The position numbers and the translations under genes are program-made. A DNA stretch of 64,000 bases from the IMG/VR virus record IMGVR_UViG_3300036944_001324, positions 124,001 to 188,000 of that record; one strand, given 5' to 3'. Within the stretch, counting starts at the first letter, position 1; every line of letters begins with the position of its first letter. Positions 41,088-46,571 of the stretch are shown piece after piece. A model generated the notes under the pieces. That model saw only the letters and a list, made by a program, of their open reading frames with translations, was not told where the DNA came from and made no database searches.

Positions 41088-41155
41088 AGTTAGGATTACA
41101 CTCCTCCCTCGAGATGCATTTCGTCAACAAAGTACTTTCAAGAAAGGAACACCCC

Positions 41156-43129
41156 ATGGGCGTTCAATCTGGTAACAACCAAACCAACGTGTCTTCTGCT
41201 GCTCCTGCACAACAAACCCCCGATGCGGGTCTGCACGTCCGTTCCGAACAAAAGCAAGCTGCTGCTGCCGACACCTCCGGCATGTGGAGTTTTGTCAACA
41301 GCGGCCTGCCTGAAATCGTCTCGACCAAAGCCGGCGGCGCCGACGTTCGCACCATCGTGGCCACCATCGCCGCGATCATGGCCAAGGAAGCTCCTCAGCC
41401 TGGCTTCGATGTGGACACCCACGTCGTGGACAACACCGTGGACACCGGCTGGCGCTACAGCACCGTGATCGTCTCGCTCAAGCAGAAGACCACCAACACC
41501 GTCGCGTTCTACCCGCTGGTGCTCGAGTCGACCGAAACCCGCGCCCTGGAAGCCGACGTGCGCGAAGTGGGCAACATCGTCTACCACGTGGACCGTGTGC
41601 CTTCGGACGCTCTGGACGCCGACATGACGGCAGCTATCGCCAAGCTGATGCTCACGACCTTCCCCGGTCATGAACTGCTGGACGTGGGCGGCATGGTGGT
41701 GGCTCGCACCGTCGATGCTGCCGCTGAAGATCAAGTGCGTCCCGTGCTGTACAACGCAGTGCGCGCCTGCTTGACCGCCATCGTGGAAAAGAACCCCGAG
41801 TTCGTCGACATGAACCTGGGCCTGCGGTCTGACGACACGTACCAAAGCGTCAACCTGCAAGTCACGAACCAGCACCACATCGACATCGTCGGCCAGCCCA
41901 TCCGCCAAGACGTGATCGTCACCCTGACGGCTCGCCAAAAGCAGAACGACCAAGGCAATCAGCCCGGTGGCCAAAAGCACCGCTCGATCCACGACATCGG
42001 TGGCACTGAATCCGTGATCGGCGGCATCGGTGGTTTCTTCGACGTGGTGATCACGCCTCCTGCGACCAACTCGGCCTACGCGATGGCCAACCAGAACCCC
42101 CTGGACCGCACGCGTTCGTTCGTCAAGCGCCTGGTGCTGACGCACTTCAACCAACCGCGTCTGTCGACCCTGTCGTCGACGCTGATGATGCTGAACCAAG
42201 CGACTCTGTTCTCCGATCCGTCGGTGAGCGATTCGGTGTTCTATCAGCGCATGAAGCAGCACCGCCTGGACGTCGGCGCCAAGGACAAGGGTGTGGACCC
42301 TACCGATGTGGGCATCCTGAACCTGATCAGCAACGTGATGAACGTGCCTGCCGGTCAAGCCGTGCAACCGTTCGATCTCAAGAGCAACACGCTGACCACC
42401 GATGTGTTCGCCGGCTTCATGAACCAGGTCTTCCACCCTGGCTTCTCGTTGGCGATCGACGTTCCTCGCGCCGGCCCACAAAGCTGGGTGCTGGACGTGT
42501 TCACCGGTGCAGCTGCTGGCCGTCCTGAAGCTCTGAGCGAAATCGTCCGTGCAGCCAACAAGCTGACCAACGGCGCTTTCGGCAATCACTTCTTCAAGGG
42601 CTCGCCTGCCGGTCAAAACATCGTGACGACCGACATGATCTTCTCCGAAGTGAACAACACCGTGCACAACGGCTACTACGTCAAGGGTGACGGCGTCAAG
42701 CGCGACATCCGTGAAGTGGACTACCTGTACGTGCTGAACCGCTTTGGCCAGATGGACAAGACGGCCCTCGACTGGGCCATGACGTTCCTGGTGGACCGCG
42801 TGAATCCCTACCAGCGCATGGCGCGCCGCAAGGAAATCATCGAAGCCTGTGTCGGCGGCCGCGTGACCATCACTGGTTTCAGCGAGCGTCACACCTTCAG
42901 CGATCACTTCGTCGGCTCGCTGTTCGCAGCCTGCCTGGACATGAAGCTCAAGCCCAACTTCCAGTACAACAACCCGCTGGCGGGTGCTACGACTGGTCTG
43001 GTGGCTCCTGGCTTCGTGGGCTCGCGCGGCATGATCAACGGCAACCTGCTGCAAGCTGGCTTCACCGCCGCTGGCAACAACGCGGCCGCTGGTGGCGCTT
43101 TCCACAACCCATCCCTGGGTCGTTGGTAA
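41156..43129 (+). CDS. chmA: Chimallin, phage nucleus shell protein
   Basis: 657 aa from ATG 41156 (SD AAAGGA). GQPIRQD, GYY...RDIREVDYL and ITG...R motifs. Extreme codon bias. Lies directly upstream of the nvRNAP beta' gene. Confidence 0.88.
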   Translation: MGVQSGNNQTNVSSAAPAQQTPDAGLHVRSEQKQAAAADTSGMWSFVNSGLPEIVSTKAGGADVRTIVATIAAIMAKEAPQPGFDVDTHVVDNTVDTGWRYSTVIVSLKQKTTNTVAFYPLVLESTETRALEADVREVGNIVYHVDRVPSDALDADMTAAIAKLMLTTFPGHELLDVGGMVVARTVDAAAEDQVRPVLYNAVRACLTAIVEKNPEFVDMNLGLRSDDTYQSVNLQVTNQHHIDIVGQPIRQDVIVTLTARQKQNDQGNQPGGQKHRSIHDIGGTESVIGGIGGFFDVVITPPATNSAYAMANQNPLDRTRSFVKRLVLTHFNQPRLSTLSSTLMMLNQATLFSDPSVSDSVFYQRMKQHRLDVGAKDKGVDPTDVGILNLISNVMNVPAGQAVQPFDLKSNTLTTDVFAGFMNQVFHPGFSLAIDVPRAGPQSWVLDVFTGAAAGRPEALSEIVRAANKLTNGAFGNHFFKGSPAGQNIVTTDMIFSEVNNTVHNGYYVKGDGVKRDIREVDYLYVLNRFGQMDKTALDWAMTFLVDRVNPYQRMARRKEIIEACVGGRVTITGFSERHTFSDHFVGSLFAACLDMKLKPNFQYNNPLAGATTGLVAPGFVGSRGMINGNLLQAGFTAAGNNAAAGGAFHNPSLGRW

Positions 43130-43318
43130 GCAGTTGCTACATGGGTAGCGTAAGTTATCCATGTTTCACAAGCCTTGCATGAAAGAGTAATCACACACCA
43201 CACTCAACCTACTTCTTTGACACCGCTTTAAAAGAGCTTTAAGTCATTGAGGTAGGAAGAGTGCGTGTGGTTATTTCTTTTATGCTGTCAGTTCATAAAT
43301 ACAAGGAGTGCAGAGAAG

Positions 43319-43489
43319 ATGGTTCCAAGTTCGAAGAAAGTTCAAGTCAATCATAGCGTCGAGCGCGCAATTCGCTCGTTCAGCCGTAGTCGCTGGCCGA
43401 TGGTGACACAAGGCGTCTTGCTGGGTGTTGCTGCGATTGGCGCAACGAGTATGATGTTCAACGTGATCACTCACGTAATCCAGAACTAA
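43319..43489 (+). CDS. Small single-TM protein
   Basis: 56 aa; SD AAGGAG; hydrophobic C-half. Confidence 0.6.
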   Translation: MVPSSKKVQVNHSVERAIRSFSRSRWPMVTQGVLLGVAAIGATSMMFNVITHVIQN

Positions 43490-43492
43490 GCA

Positions 43493-44767
43493 ATGGCCAT
43501 CTATAAGACCATTGTGAGTTTTGACTCGATGTTCAAGAATGCTCGAGTCACTCCTGTGATCATCAATGACTTGCCGATCGTCACCGAAGAAGATCGCAAG
43601 AACAACAACGCACGCATCTACCATGAGTACACCAACGACGTGTTTAACACCACGCCGTCGTGCAATTGCGGTAAGCTCCGTTCCGAGTATCTGAAGGACA
43701 TTGTTTGTCCTGTTTGTAACACACCAGTGGAAAGCGTTCTTGAACGCGATCTGGAGCCTCAGCTGTGGATGCGTAGGCCGCACGGTGTTGCCAGGTTCAT
43801 CAACCCAGCAGTGTGGAACATGCTGCGGGAGTTCCTGTGGGTCAAAGAAGGTAACTTCGACGTTCTGCAGTATCTCACGAACACAGACTACCACCCCAAG
43901 AAGCTGCCGAGTTTGGCGTACTCCATTCAGGAAGCAGGGATCGTTCGAGGCTACAACAACTTTGTTGAAAACTTCGACGTGATCATCAAAAAGCTCCTGG
44001 GTTTGACGCGCTACAACAAAGCCGATCGCAAGGATCGCCGGATTGCGTTGAGCAAGGTCCTGCGTCGCTACGCCAACAACATCTTTTCTGACCACATCCC
44101 TGTCATCAACAAAAACTTGATGATCTTGGAGAACGTCAGTTCTGACCGGTACGTCGACCGTACCGTTCCGATGGCTGTGGATGCGTACCGATTGCTGCTG
44201 GGGATCGATACTGGTGCATCACCGTTCGGTGGTGAAGATGGTGATCGTACGGTCGGCTACAAGAAACTTCGTGCTCGTGAAAACCGGGTAGCGAAGATGC
44301 TGGACATGATCTGTAACTTCAACCTTGAGTACTTCAAGGCCAACGTTGCATCCAAACCAGGTCTGGCTCGCAAGCATCTGTGCTCTTCCCGTGCTAACTG
44401 GTCGGCACGCTCGGTGATCACTTCTCTGACCAAGCCGCACAAATACGATGAAGTCCATGTCCCGTGGGGTGTGGGTATCGGTTTGATGCGCTATCACCTG
44501 TGCAACCGATTGACGAAGATGGGTTTTCGTACCAATCAGATCTTCGGTATGCTCAGTGCAGCGGTCGTTAAATACGACCCACTCATTGACAAGCTCTTCC
44601 AAGAGTTCATCGCTGAGTCTCCTGAAAATGGATTGGTAGTTTGGCTGTGTCGTAATCCGTCCTTGGCGCGCAGTAGTATGCAGCGCATGCGGATCACGCA
44701 GTTCAAGACTGATCCGAATGATCCAACGATCGGCTTGCCGATTCTGTCAGTCACTGGTTTCAACGCT
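43493..44767 (+). CDS. Non-virion RNAP beta' N-terminal subunit (phiKZ gp55-like), exon 1
   Basis: Zn-binding CNCG...CPVC, RSVI and RNPSL; exon ends in ...GFNA. Confidence 0.9.
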
Positions 44768-45167
44768 CGAGCGCAAGCTCAGGCCACCCCGTGTGGAAAC
44801 GCCGGGAGTGAATCTTTCCTAAAAGGGGAATCTCCCACCCACGCACGGTCTGGAACGTGTAGTGGAGGACAACCCCTTGCAAAGCATCTCTAGCTTTAGC
44901 GGACGCGTTATAGCTGGGTTTAAGATGTGCGCCTAACGGCCATCGAAAGGGCATACTGCGCGATTCGCGGCTTCAAGAAGCCGTCGTGGTGTAGCACTGA
45001 GTAGAGTAGGGTAGCTAGATCTAAGGCACCCGAAACGGAAAGGCACTGACCGCAAGTCTGGGGGTTCCCGGGCGGACGAAGTGCAAGATATGGTCTGACC
45101 ACGGCAGTAATGTCGTGCAGGTGATGCTGCTCACCGGCTAGAACTGATCAACTCTAGTGGACAAGTG
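44768..45167 (+). mobile_element. Group I self-splicing intron (IA-like), no homing endonuclease ORF
   Basis: 5' exon ends in U and intron ends in G. P3, P4 and P7 pairings and an AAGAUAUGGUCU S element are present. Removal restores NADFDGD in frame. Confidence 0.9.
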
Positions 45168-45392
45168 GATTTCGACGGCGACGCCATGGGGTTGGTGCTC
45201 GCCTTGGATGAAACCATGGCAAAGATGATCGAACCCCTTGCTCCTCACAAGAGCGCATTCGACATCTCACGTTATCGCGGTTTGTCATCGAACAATTCCC
45301 TGCCCAAGCCAGTGGTTGCTACCATCAGCAGCTACCTGTCCGGTTCTTCCGGCAAGACTGACATGAGCATGATGGAAGAGTTCGCTGTTTAA
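45168..45392 (+). CDS. Non-virion RNAP beta' N-terminal subunit, exon 2
   Basis: Begins DFDGD; spliced product is 499 aa. Confidence 0.9.
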   Translation, partial: DFDGDAMGLVLALDETMAKMIEPLAPHKSAFDISRYRGLSSNNSLPKPVVATISSYLSGSSGKTDMSMMEEFAV

Positions 45393-45418
45393 CGCGATCG
45401 ATTCAAGAAAGGAAAAGG

Positions 45419-46039
45419 ATGGGACCTGTATTCGGAGATAGCAGCGTAGTTGATGCGTTGCTGTTTGGCGTTCCCACGCAATCTACCGTTTCGTTTGTGC
45501 AACGTGAATTTGAGCGATTCTCCAACACTGCTGTTGGTGAGTTTGGTCAACGTCTGGTTGCAGAGACAAAAACGCTACTGGACCGTTTTACGAACAGTTC
45601 AGTGATGAACATGGCGCAAGCTGCGCTCAATCAGATCCGGTCTATCGGGATGGCAGATACCATCTATCGGTTTGATCGGATGCAGGACTTCCAGATCGCG
45701 CAGCCGATGATGCAGACGTTTATCATGGCTAACCCCATGGTGCGTAAGCGTTACCACGAGCAGCGCTGTGATGGTTATTCTGACACGTATGTGGACAAGC
45801 ATCCCGGCAAGATCGGAAAAGATCACGTCCACTGGCAGATGGTGAACAACGGTTTGGTGACTGAAGAAACCGATGGCGGTGTCAGTTGGACGAACTATTC
45901 TGGGGCGTTCACTGATGAAGGCGGACTGCATCTGCAGCCTGTCCAAGCGCATTCTGTCTTGTCTACCTGGCGGTCGCTGGAGAAGTTGTTCGCTGAAGGC
46001 GAATTCGATCCGACGAGTCCTTGGAACGGCAAGCTGTAA
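45419..46039 (+). CDS. Conserved phiKZ-like hypothetical protein
   Basis: 206 aa with IMANP..R, DGYSDTY and DPTS motifs. Confidence 0.8.
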   Translation: MGPVFGDSSVVDALLFGVPTQSTVSFVQREFERFSNTAVGEFGQRLVAETKTLLDRFTNSSVMNMAQAALNQIRSIGMADTIYRFDRMQDFQIAQPMMQTFIMANPMVRKRYHEQRCDGYSDTYVDKHPGKIGKDHVHWQMVNNGLVTEETDGGVSWTNYSGAFTDEGGLHLQPVQAHSVLSTWRSLEKLFAEGEFDPTSPWNGKL

Positions 46040-46157
46040 TCCAGCTCAAAAGTAGAAGATCCAACTGCACTCGCTTATTCAGCCTTCTTGGTTGAGTAGG
46101 TGGCTGCTGGTTGGATCTTCTTTTTATGTTCTTTCTTTTTCGGAGAGGTTATTTTAC

Positions 46158-46571
46158 ATGGCAACTGATACCAAACCACTGCCTAGCTTGTCTACAGATG
46201 GCTGGATTACGTCGACCCCTCAGAAGGTCGACTATATGCTCGGGCATTTCTATGCCTCTGAAATTACCCAAACGCACATGTTCCCGAACAACGTGCACAG
46301 TTTGGTGAACTTGGTTCAACTGTACAAAGAAGACCTGGTCATGCTGGGGACCAAGGTGCAAGAATCTTTGCGCACGTATTTCGGTGGTTATTTTCCATCG
46401 GTGACTGCTCGGGCACAATGCCGTGACATTCCCAACGCTCCGGGACAAGTGGGTATTCACATTTTCTTGGAAGTTCGTGATGTCAATGGTGTTGTTTACA
46501 ACGCCGCCAACGTGGTTGACATCGAAGACTCCAAGATCATGAAGATCTCGGCCATTAACAACGGTCAATAG
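46158..46571 (+). CDS. Conserved phiKZ-like hypothetical protein
   Basis: SD GAGG before ATG 46158. Confidence 0.75.
   Translation: MATDTKPLPSLSTDGWITSTPQKVDYMLGHFYASEITQTHMFPNNVHSLVNLVQLYKEDLVMLGTKVQESLRTYFGGYFPSVTARAQCRDIPNAPGQVGIHIFLEVRDVNGVVYNAANVVDIEDSKIMKISAINNGQ

What the first reader, a model, noticed from the sequence alone, without database searches (positions are those of the whole stretch)
44768..45167. ORF-less 400-nt group I intron splits the RNAP catalytic NA|DFDGD motif and has a variant P7
Seen: exon 1 ends ...TTC AAC GCT (U at the splice site) and the intron ends ...AAGTG (omega G) before GAT TTC GAC GGC GAC. P1 is gcu/GGC with a u-G pair capped by GAGC-GCAA-GCUC. P3 is UCUUUCC 44813-44819 with GGAAAGG 45037-45043. 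P4 is AAGGGG 44823-44828 with CCCCUU 44873-44878. P7 is A(C)GGCCA 44936-44942 with UGGUCU 45091-45096, versus the canonical A(C)GACUA/UAGUCU, i.e. one compensatory change and one wobble change. Extra helices between P7 and P3 suggest class IA. Known: the phiKZ homologue is intron-split with a homing endonuclease. Inference: here the endonuclease was lost or acts in trans, and nvRNAP-dependent transcription relies on this splicing event. Automatic annotation would report two broken genes.
Basis: partly seen in the sequence, partly recalled or inferred. Interest (0 to 1): 0.7.

Follow-up and report, generated by a model that had tools for sequence, protein, structure and literature searches.

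The report
ORF-less group I intron in phage RNAP
A 400-base self-splicing (group I) intron without its own endonuclease gene interrupts the catalytic-site codons of an RNA polymerase gene in an uncultured nucleus-forming jumbo phage. It is a new member of a known kind, has recently moved between phages, and turns up as a circular RNA in a wastewater-sludge transcriptome.

Summary
Window 44768-45167 is a 400-nt insertion lying exactly between the codons for NA and DFDGD of the gene next to chimallin, the orthologue of phiKZ gp55 (non-virion RNAP beta'-N). The two exons match one protein profile without a gap (positions 1-417, then 418-475). An intron-free relative reads GCT|GAC across the same point.

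Rfam's group I model does not detect the window's copy, even at E<=10. However, the copy is clearly homologous to same-site introns that pass Rfam's threshold: L024, nhmmer E=8.7e-34, 53.4 bits; phage EL, E=2.5e-7, 54.9 bits.

In four other family members 94% of pair cells stay paired, against 36-45% when the partner is slid, and 21 of 74 pair positions show double compensatory changes.

One metatranscriptome contains only the intron, joined 3' end to 5' end minus 2 nt. That is the product expected of omega-G circularisation.

EL and L040 carry homologous HNH endonuclease genes in loop L1. Here L1 is a GCAA-capped mini-hairpin, so the endonuclease gene was probably lost. The genome encodes no recognisable homing endonuclease.

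The intron is 99% identical to a copy in a phage whose exons are only 78-80% identical, which indicates recent lateral transfer.

Verdict: new member of a known kind, of moderate interest.

The parts
43493..44767 (+). Exon 1 of the non-virion RNAP beta'-N gene (425 codons), ending ...GFNA. U44767 is the 5' splice-site nucleotide.
   Evidence: translation, phrog_2987 positions 1-417, E=2.9e-123, homologues PhiPA3 054 and relatives; chimallin lies upstream.
44768..45167 (+). The 400-nt ORF-less group I intron.
   Evidence: Intron-only RNA with circular coverage.
44765..44784 (+). P1: exon GCU pairs with the guide sequence GGC (U44767-G44782 wobble). The P1 extension is GAGC/GCUC with a GCAA loop. 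This loop (L1) is where EL and L040 carry their HNH gene.
   Evidence: GCU/GGC is kept in all six family members; EL and L040 layout.
44785..44810 (+). P2: 10 bp with bulged A44807 and U44792, capped by a GAAA tetraloop.
   Evidence: fold; 10 double-change cells in relatives.
44813..44819 (+). P3 5' strand, UCUUUCC.
   Evidence: Pairs with 45037-45043. Two positions show U-A>C-G and C-G>U-A changes in L008 and L024.
44823..44878 (+). P4 (44823-28 with 44873-78) enclosing P5 (44833-35 with 44867-69) and the P5a extension (44839-65).
   Evidence: The third P4 pair is G-C, U-A or A-U in three members.
44879..44932 (+). P6 (G44879-C44932, C44880-G44931) with P6a and P6b extensions.
   Evidence: G-C>A-U in L008. 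Strain variants at 44881, 44929 and 44930 fall in the internal loop.
44936..44942 (+). P7 5' strand, A(C)GGCCA. C44937 is bulged. G44938-C45095 is the presumed guanosine-binding pair.
   Evidence: Pairs with 45091-96. Invariant in six family members. Covaries with other intron families at this locus.
44956..44994 (+). P7.1 hairpin. Its tip is deleted in L008 and shorter in L024, L040 and EL.
45009..45031 (+). P7.2 hairpin, the most conserved peripheral element.
45037..45043 (+). P3 3' strand, GGAAAGG.
45044..45083 (+). P8.
   Evidence: C-G>U-A at the closing pair and G-C>A-U in the inner helix.
45084..45096 (+). J8/7 (AAGAUA plus U) and the P7 3' strand UGGUCU. It resembles the Rfam consensus AAGAUAUAGUC.
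   Evidence: compare the Rfam consensus line.
45100..45158 (+). P9 (45100-17, GUAA loop), P9.1 (45120-35) and P9.2 (45137-58).
   Evidence: Double changes occur in all three helices.
45167..45167 (+). Omega-G, the last intron nucleotide.
   Evidence: The 3' end ...GGACAAGUG|GAUUU is identical in EL, L024, L040 and L038.
45168..45392 (+). Exon 2 (74 codons plus stop), starting DFDGD.
   Evidence: phrog_2987 positions 418-475.

Best explanation
Window 44768-45167 is a group I (IA-like) ribozyme intron with no endonuclease gene. It sits in the gene for the beta'-N subunit of the phage's non-virion RNA polymerase, between the codons for NA and DFDGD.

Inferred pathway, from standard group I chemistry:
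- The gene is transcribed as one precursor.
- The intron folds into P1-P9.2.
- A free guanosine bound at the G44938-C45095 pair of P7 attacks after U44767, which forms a wobble pair with G44782 in P1.
- The freed exon-1 3'-OH then attacks after omega-G 45167.
- This joins ...GCU to GAU... and yields mRNA for a 499-aa subunit with an intact NADFDGD motif.
- The excised intron circularises when omega-G attacks after its second nucleotide, giving a stable 398-nt circle.

Shown here: the insertion site, homology to validated group I introns, the conserved and covarying fold, an intron-only circular RNA in nature, and the absence of any ORF or homing endonuclease in the genome.

Inferred: self-splicing chemistry, exon ligation in vivo, and loss of an ancestral HNH gene from loop L1.

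The intron reached, or left, this phage recently by lateral transfer. Transfer most likely used an endonuclease supplied by another element, such as the HNH-bearing intron that lies 5 nt downstream in sister phages.
For: Site
- The exons abut in the protein profile at 417/418.
- The intron-free relative L039 (78% aa identity) reads AACGCT|GACTTC.
- EL compared with intron-free GXNNE2 gives GCT|GAT with no ambiguity.

Homology
- nhmmer with L024 intron A against the whole 271-kb genome finds only window 44795-45167, E=8.7e-34. The EL core gives E=2.5e-7.
- L024-A scores 53.4 bits and EL 54.9 bits against RF00028, whose gathering score is 50.

Fold
- Local folds give every canonical helix.
- RNAalifold recovers them with 28 double-change pairs.
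- 228 of 242 cells are paired, against 36-45% when slid. There are 36 double-change cells at 21 of 74 positions.
- The four differences from L038 and the C45046U variant either keep pairing or lie in loops.
- Only the + strand is structured.

RNA
- In metatranscriptome X19, coverage is confined to 44769-45166 with none on the exons.
- One contig joins 45166 to 44769, which is equivalent to G45167 to A44770.

Necessity
- The only other DFDGD in the genome is an uninterrupted paralogue at genome position 117295.

Endonuclease
- EL and L040 carry homologous HNH_3 ORFs in L1.
- The window's genome has none.

Mobility
- The intron is 99.0% identical to L038's copy, while exon 1 is 78.3% and exon 2 is 80.4% identical.
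- The near-identical tract runs from about 44753 to 45175.
Against: - RF00028 does not match the window's copy, even at E<=10 on a 631-nt stretch or in the whole genome.
- No read or contig across the ligated exons was seen in eight runs.
- The circle rests on one contig of depth 8.9 in one run, with only 23 nt on the short side. That is below the tool's own 31-nt rule for counting a bridge.
- P1 has only three exon base pairs, and no convincing P10 was found.
- Self-splicing was not and cannot be assayed here.
Confidence: 0.9

Rival explanations
1. It is a group I intron, but it is not an autonomous ribozyme in vivo. Splicing would depend on a phage or host protein cofactor, because the family lost its L1 endonuclease (which in some systems doubles as a maturase) and has an unusually short P1.
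For: P1 pairs only 3 exon nucleotides and no P10 was found. Rfam's model fails on this copy. By established knowledge, many group I introns need chaperones or maturases in vivo.
Against: The core and the GNRA loops L2 and L9 are conserved and covary as in self-splicing phage introns. HNH intron endonucleases are not known maturases. The circular product is a ribozyme-type product.
Confidence: 0.07
2. It is a decayed, non-splicing relic, so the beta'-N gene is a pseudogene or is expressed as two polypeptides (466 aa and 75 aa) that assemble without covalent joining.
For: Gene callers report two ORFs, the second with a GTG at 45165. No ligated-exon read was seen. Jumbo-phage RNAPs are already split into several chains.
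Against: The split would fall inside the metal-binding NADFDGD motif and add 41 foreign residues. Helices are kept by compensatory change. The same intron is identical in independent samples and 99% identical in a distant phage. An RNA with exactly the intron's ends accumulates as a circle with no exon coverage. The genome has no spare nvRNAP beta'-N copy.
Confidence: 0.02
3. The insertion is another kind of element: a group II intron, an intein, a translational bypass element, or a small-RNA gene between two genes.
For: Rfam finds no family match at all for the 400 nt.
Against: The length is not a multiple of 3 and the frame contains stops, which excludes an intein. It is too short for a group II intron and has no domain V-like match. 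It is too long for a bypass element. Homologues at the same site are Rfam-validated group I introns.
Confidence: 0.01

Closest known systems
Pseudomonas phage EL intron in gp024/gp026 (NC_007623, 29669-31085), carrying HNH gene gp025
   Same: Same gene, same insertion site (GCT|GAT) and the same 3' end GGACAAGUG|GAUUU. The P7 (GGCCA/UGGUC), P7.2, P9 and P9.1 elements are homologous. It passes Rfam at 54.9 bits.
   Different: EL's intron is 1417 nt, with a 326-aa HNH_3+NUMOD1 endonuclease in loop L1 and a larger P5 domain. The window's is 400 nt, has no ORF, and has a divergent P4-P6 domain. RefSeq does not annotate EL's intron: it calls gp025 a 'putative replication protein' and exon 2 'hypothetical'.
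phiKZ gp55 / gp56 (HNH) / gp56.1 intron
   Same: The orthologous gene next to chimallin is split in the same catalytic motif by a group I intron (PMC11512511 citing Ceyssens 2014).
   Different: The insertion site is AAT|GCT, 3 nt upstream. P7 is canonical GACUA/UAGUC. It carries an HNH ORF, matches Rfam strongly (75.6 bits), and has no detectable nucleotide homology to the window's intron.
PhiPA3 gp210 intron in the virion RNAP beta subunit (Birkholz et al. 2024, PMC11620839)
   Same: A group I intron at conserved catalytic aspartate codons of a chimallivirus RNAP gene. Its nicking HNH endonuclease targets intron-free alleles of co-infecting phages.
   Different: It lies in a different gene (vRNAP beta, not nvRNAP beta') and carries its own endonuclease. 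The window's intron has none, so it cannot act as a weapon by itself.
ORF-less phage group I introns mobilised by a separate endonuclease ('collaborative homing', cyanophage psbA; from my own knowledge, not checked in a paper here), and multi-intron phage genes such as Twort nrdE (PMC113830, cited in PMC12908238)
   Same: An ORF-less intron in a conserved site with signs of mobility. Several introns are packed into one conserved motif.
   Different: Here the candidate helper is the HNH of a second intron only 5 nt away (L038). That helper is absent from the window's genome. Mobilisation is inferred from sequence identity only.

Membership tests
Group I intron | 5' splice site after a U that forms a U-G wobble with an internal guide sequence in P1 | tested here: met
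   U44767-G44782, flanked by C-G and G-C pairs. The same GCU/GGC pairing occurs in L008, L024, L038, L040 and EL.
Group I intron | Terminal guanosine (omega-G) before the 3' splice site | tested here: met
   G45167. The ...GGACAAGUG| end is identical in five homologues.
Group I intron | Core fold P3-P4-P5-P6-P7-P8 with a P3/P7 pseudoknot, supported by covariation | tested here: met
   All helices are found. RNAalifold recovers P2-P5 and P7.2-P9.1. 94% of cells are paired against 36-45% when slid, with double changes in P2, P3, P4, P6, P8, P9, P9.1 and P9.2. P7 is invariant within the family but covaries across the neighbouring families.
Group I intron | Guanosine-binding G-C pair in P7 next to a bulged nucleotide, and an A-rich J8/7 | tested here: met
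   A44936, bulged C44937, then G44938-C45095. J8/7 reads AAGAUAU, as in the Rfam consensus. This is sequence-level evidence only.
Group I intron | Match to the curated covariance model RF00028 at gathering score | tested here: not met
   No hit at gathering score or at E<=10. The homologues L024-A (53.4 bits) and EL (54.9 bits) do pass. The window's copy is tied to them by nhmmer at E=8.7e-34 and 2.5e-7. I read this as a model false negative caused by the P5a, P6b and P7.1 insertions and the atypical P4.
Group I intron | Guanosine-dependent self-splicing, with excised and circular intron products | tested here: inconclusive
   Metatranscriptome X19 holds only 44769-45166 plus a 3'-to-5' junction lacking 2 nt. 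That is consistent with omega-G circularisation. No exon-exon junction was seen, and there was no biochemical assay.
Subgroup IA (IA2-like, T4 td / Twort type) | P7.1 and P7.2 inserted between P7 and P3'; P9.1 and P9.2 present | tested here: inconclusive
   Two hairpins lie at 44956-94 and 45009-31, with P9.1 and P9.2 downstream. The layout fits, but no subclass covariance models were available.
Mobile (homing) group I intron | Intron-encoded homing endonuclease | tested here: not met
   There is no ORF in the intron. The genome has no HNH, HNH_3, GIY-YIG or NUMOD1 match and no EL gp025 homologue.
Mobile (homing) group I intron | Intron-plus and intron-minus alleles, and a lateral-transfer footprint with short co-converted exon flanks | tested here: met
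   L039 is intron-free. The intron is 99.0% identical in L038 while the exons are 78-80% identical, and the identity tract runs from about 44753 to 45175.

The most novel reading that the evidence does not exclude
An endonuclease-less ribozyme intron that is still actively mobile by hitch-hiking. The proposal is that it spreads between roughly 20%-diverged jumbo phages inside the co-conversion tract of a neighbouring HNH-bearing intron inserted only 5 nt downstream, a twin-intron arrangement with the micro-exon GATTT. A less likely route is reverse splicing of its abundant circular RNA. On this view the NADFDGD codons of chimallivirus RNAP genes are an arena where at least five intron lineages compete for sites within 15 nt. 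The orphan intron may also protect its carrier from rival intron endonucleases by disrupting their target.
Probability: 0.3. Interest if true: 0.65.

Novelty: new member of a known kind. Interest (0 to 1): 0.45.

Why it matters
- Annotation. Gene callers split this essential polymerase subunit into a 466-aa and a 75-aa 'hypothetical protein'. RefSeq does the same for phage EL. Rfam, the standard detector, misses this copy, so surveys of jumbo-phage introns that rely on it will undercount.
- Biology. Middle and late transcription in nucleus-forming phages depends on the non-virion polymerase, so expression of the whole late programme hangs on a ribozyme step.
- Evolution. The locus gives a compact natural series: intron-free, HNH-bearing, ORF-less, and twin-intron alleles with 5-nt or 12-nt micro-exons. 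This series can be used to study how introns and their endonucleases gain, lose and share mobility. The topic is of current interest because a PhiPA3 intron endonuclease acts as a weapon between co-infecting phages (PMC11620839).
- Method. An intron-only circular RNA in an environmental transcriptome shows that such data can validate predicted introns of uncultured phages.

Tried and rejected
- Rfam at gathering score and at E<=10 on the window, and RF00028 on the whole genome, gave nothing for this copy. The two microRNA matches are chance hits (E of 0.39 and 9.3, far below gathering score).
- megablast and blastn of the gene and the intron against 50,697 phage records found no match. The phage has no close isolate relative; the best is 37% aa identity.
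- A BLAST search of the intron against its own genome found only itself.
- Two pattern scans were too strict or had a mis-set gap and found nothing new.
- The pattern GATATGGTCTG..GGACAAGTG gave 9 prokaryotic hits and L025. About 30 hits are expected by chance. L025 was inspected and is unrelated coding DNA. The 9 prokaryotic loci were not followed up.
- I looked for a spliced exon junction in 4 metatranscriptomes and 4 further runs and found none. Exon coverage there is sparse or the material is probably DNA. The loose ends at 45180, 45189 and 45190 come from other sequences, not from exon 1.
- Exact-protein look-ups of the downstream gene and of chimallin returned only identical copies of this intron in other samples, so they added no variation.
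- Intein, group II intron, translational bypass and two-polypeptide readings were considered and rejected (see the rival explanations).
- I did not use the count of structure pairs, because it needs a typed 430-character structure string. The same counts were made by script instead.

Full report
WHAT IS THERE

The window is part of a 271,654-bp, 99%-complete IMG/VR jumbo-phage genome. ORF 41114-43129 is chimallin (PF25677). The next large gene, starting at 43493, is the orthologue of phiKZ gp55, PhiPA3 054 and EL gp024, the beta'-N subunit of the non-virion RNA polymerase. Its best isolate match is only 37% identical.

Exon 1 (43493-44767) translates to 425 aa ending ...GFNA. Exon 2 (45168-45392) translates to DFDGDAMG.... 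Against PHROG 2987 the two pieces cover profile positions 1-417 and 418-475, so nothing is missing and nothing is duplicated at the join.

The 400 nt in between are not a multiple of three. The exon-1 frame stops at 44893, and no credible ORF lies inside. Gene callers do report two broken genes of 466 and 75 aa.

All coordinates are right:
- P1: G44765-C44784, C44766-G44783, U44767-G44782, then GAGC/GCUC capped by GCAA.
- P3: 44813-19 with 45037-43.
- P4: 44823-28 with 44873-78.
- P7: A44936 and 44938-42 with 45091-96, with C44937 bulged.

Local folding adds the rest: P2 (GAAA loop), P5/P5a, P6/P6a/P6b, P7.1, P7.2, P8, P9 (GUAA loop), P9.1 and P9.2. The sense strand folds better than shuffles (z = -2.19). 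The antisense strand does not (z = +0.18).

IS IT A GROUP I INTRON?

Rfam's RF00028 does not see it at gathering score, at E<=10 on a 631-nt slice, or in a whole-genome search. I therefore looked for relatives. Homologous introns sit at exactly the same site, GCT|GAT:
- L008, a partial copy from a metagenome.
- L024, a viral contig with a 326-nt copy.
- Pseudomonas phage EL, 1417 nt.
- L038, a 256-kb phage contig.
- L040, a copy of about 1.44 kb.

L024's copy scores 53.4 bits and EL's core 54.9 bits against RF00028, whose gathering score is 50. nhmmer with L024's intron against the whole 271-kb genome finds only window 44795-45167, at E=8.7e-34. EL's core finds 44997-45166 at E=2.5e-7.

So the window's copy belongs to a family whose other members pass the curated test. 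The window's own miss is best explained by its extra P5a, P6b and P7.1 insertions and its atypical P4 (AAGGGG instead of UGCGGG-like).

COVARIATION

RNAalifold on six members (A4), with no input from me, recovers P2, P3, P4, P5, P7.2, P8, P9 and P9.1. Of its 71 pairs, 28 show at least one double change.

I also took the helices defined on the window and read them in L008, L024, L040 and EL:
- 228 of 242 cells (94%) form standard pairs.
- Sliding the 3' partner by 1-3 columns drops this to 36-45%.
- 36 cells at 21 of 74 positions carry compensatory double changes, spread over P2, P3, P4, P6, P8, P9, P9.1 and P9.2.

P3 has two such positions. The third pair of P4 is G-C, U-A or A-U in three members.

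P7 is invariant inside the family. Across the other intron families at this locus it reads GACUA/UAGUC (phiKZ and the second introns of L010 and L013) or GAUCA/UGAUC (L007 and the first introns of L010 and L013). The G-C pair after the bulge is kept.

The four differences between the window and L038, and the C45046U variant in run X19, either keep pairing or lie in loops.

THE SPLICE JUNCTION

The intron-free relative L039 (78% aa identity) reads ...TTCAACGCT|GACTTCGAT.... EL compared with its intron-free sibling GXNNE2 fixes the insertion at GCT|GAT with no ambiguity.

In the window, a junction shifted by one (44766/45167) would give the same protein. The U at -1, the omega-G, and the EL comparison all favour 44767/45168.

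RNA EVIDENCE

In the activated-sludge metatranscriptome X19, the only sequence laid on 43400-46400 is the intron itself, 44769-45166, at depth 4-9. There is no exon coverage, which argues against DNA carry-over.

One 237-nt contig runs from 45144-45166 straight into 44769-44982. Because both 45167 and 44769 are G, this equals G45167 joined to A44770, a 398-nt circle lacking the first two intron nucleotides.

That is the product expected when omega-G of an excised group I intron attacks near its own 5' end (established knowledge of group I circularisation). It also places both RNA ends within 2 nt of the predicted splice sites.

Caveats: this is one contig in one run, with a 23-nt short side, below the tool's 31-nt rule. 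No exon-exon read was found in any of eight runs, so ligation in vivo remains inferred.

THE ENDONUCLEASE

[quoted passage not shown] This forms a long P1 extension whose loop holds a 326-aa or 340-aa HNH_3 (+NUMOD1) ORF. The two proteins are homologous along their length (27% identity, E=3e-21).

In the window, L038, L008 and L024 the same loop is a 9-13-nt hairpin. The simplest reading is loss of an ancestral L1 endonuclease gene.

The window's genome has no match to HNH, HNH_3, GIY-YIG, NUMOD1 or EL gp025. A helper encoded in the same genome is therefore not supported.

RECENT MOBILITY

L038's exons are 78.3% (exon 1) and 80.4% (exon 2) identical to the window's. Its intron is 99.0% identical, 396 of 400. 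The near-identical tract begins at about 44753 and ends at about 45175, so it covers the intron plus a few exon nucleotides on each side. By contrast, L008's intron is only 82% identical.

This is the footprint of recent lateral transfer of an ORF-less intron.

In L038 the intron is followed by the 5-nt micro-exon GATTT and then by a second, 1818-nt group I-like intron carrying a 428-aa HNH_3 ORF. DNA run X2 shows the same arrangement in strains of the window's own phage: its loose ends at 45172/45173 match L038's intron B letter for letter.

Hitch-hiking in the co-conversion tract of that neighbour is my favoured explanation for the mobility. It is an inference.

NECESSITY OF SPLICING

The genome has only one other DFDGD-encoding site, an uninterrupted NADFDGD at genome position 117295, presumably the virion polymerase. 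The non-virion beta'-N subunit therefore cannot be made intact without removing the 400 nt.

COMPARISON WITH WHAT IS KNOWN

Introns in phiKZ gp55 and gp180, with HNH genes gp56, gp72 and gp179, are reported in the literature (PMC11512511, citing Ceyssens 2014 and Mesyanzhinov 2002). I confirmed the layout PHIKZ055 / 056 (HNH) / 056.1 with a 75.6-bit Rfam hit. Its insertion site is AAT|GCT, 3 nt upstream, and it has no nucleotide homology to the window's intron.

PhiPA3's gp210 intron endonuclease in a virion-RNAP gene acts in competition between phages (PMC11620839). Group I introns validated by metatranscriptome reads are reported for other huge phages (PMC12880540).

The window's element is thus a new, ORF-less member of a known kind. 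Its nearest described relative is the unannotated intron of phage EL.

VERDICT

- Observation: confirmed.
- Interpretation: supported, except that a helper endonuclease is not found in this genome and the P7 variant is unremarkable.
- Confidence that this is a group I intron spliced at 44767/45168: about 0.9.
- Interest: moderate, 0.45. The value lies in the Rfam false negative, the environmental circular RNA, the lateral-transfer footprint and the crowded intron hot spot.

Noticed in passing
L038:3779-6001 (GCA_034286235.1 contig JANPYG010105989.1); window 45172/45173 in run X2: Twin introns. The 400-nt intron is followed by a 5-nt micro-exon GATTT and then an 1818-nt intron with a 428-aa HNH_3 ORF inserted at TT|C of the Phe codon. 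Strains of the window's own phage in DNA run X2 carry the same second intron; the window's genome does not.
   Followed up: partly
L010:2214-2871, L013:5228-5918, L024:1132-about 478 (- strand): Other jumbo phages have two tandem Rfam-positive group I introns flanking a 12-nt micro-exon (GACTTCGACGGT or GATTTTGACGGT, encoding DFDG).
   Followed up: partly
window 44762-45182 and homologous codons in L035, L007/L014, L015, L020, L038: At least five distinct intron insertion sites fall within 15 nt of the NADFDGD codons: AAT|GCT (phiKZ), GCT|GAT (window, EL, L008, L024, L040, L010, L013), GAT|TTC (L007, L015), GATTT|C (L038, X2), and GGT|GAT (HHBS8_1, L010, L012, L013, L024). About half of the 50 closest protein clusters are truncated at roughly 411-436 aa, which suggests that introns here are very common.
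   Followed up: partly
window 44658/44659 to 45172/45173: In run X15 the dominant strain replaces 44659-45172 with 2481 unrelated letters. Run X7 breaks at the same point with TTAAAAGAATCAA.... A JGI assembly of another sample breaks between about 44660 and 44702 (L037, L023). Position 44658 lies in the codons of the conserved RNPSL motif, so this may be a further intron or a recombination boundary. The sequence was not retrievable.
   Followed up: partly
window 45077-45123 in run X3: The P7-P9 segment has about four times the depth of its flanks (a 34-nt contig at depth 300 against about 75). A contig with a related but different P3'/P8 (CGAAACGAAGAGGGGCTGACC...) joins it. Further members of this intron family therefore exist in that wastewater sample.
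   Followed up: no
L012:2082-2130: In L012 the first intron begins after ...TGTGTCAA, and the codons for KSLNA seen in its close relative L013 are absent. This may be a different 5' splice site, a deletion or a broken gene.
   Followed up: no
L018 (NC_007623.1 28226-31274): RefSeq annotates phage EL's split gene as three unrelated CDS: 'RNA polymerase beta subunit', 'putative replication protein' (really an HNH_3+NUMOD1 intron endonuclease) and 'hypothetical protein' (exon 2). EL-like phages GXNNE2 and GXNNA8 lack the intron. HHBS8_1 has a different intron at GGT|.
   Followed up: yes
genome position 117295 (6.7 kb upstream of the window start): A second, uninterrupted NADFDGD-encoding gene, presumably the virion RNAP beta' subunit.
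   Followed up: no
window 41114-43129 and 43265-43489: Chimallin (nuclear shell protein, PF25677) lies directly upstream. A conserved small ORF of 56-74 aa sits between it and the polymerase gene, in the same order as in L038, L039 and L040.
   Followed up: no
Sequencing-run result: This uncultured phage or near-identical strains occur in shale-gas, aquifer, groundwater, soil, biofilm, freshwater and wastewater metagenomes (66-100% of sampled 31-mers). It is therefore environmentally widespread. Its host is unknown.
   Followed up: no
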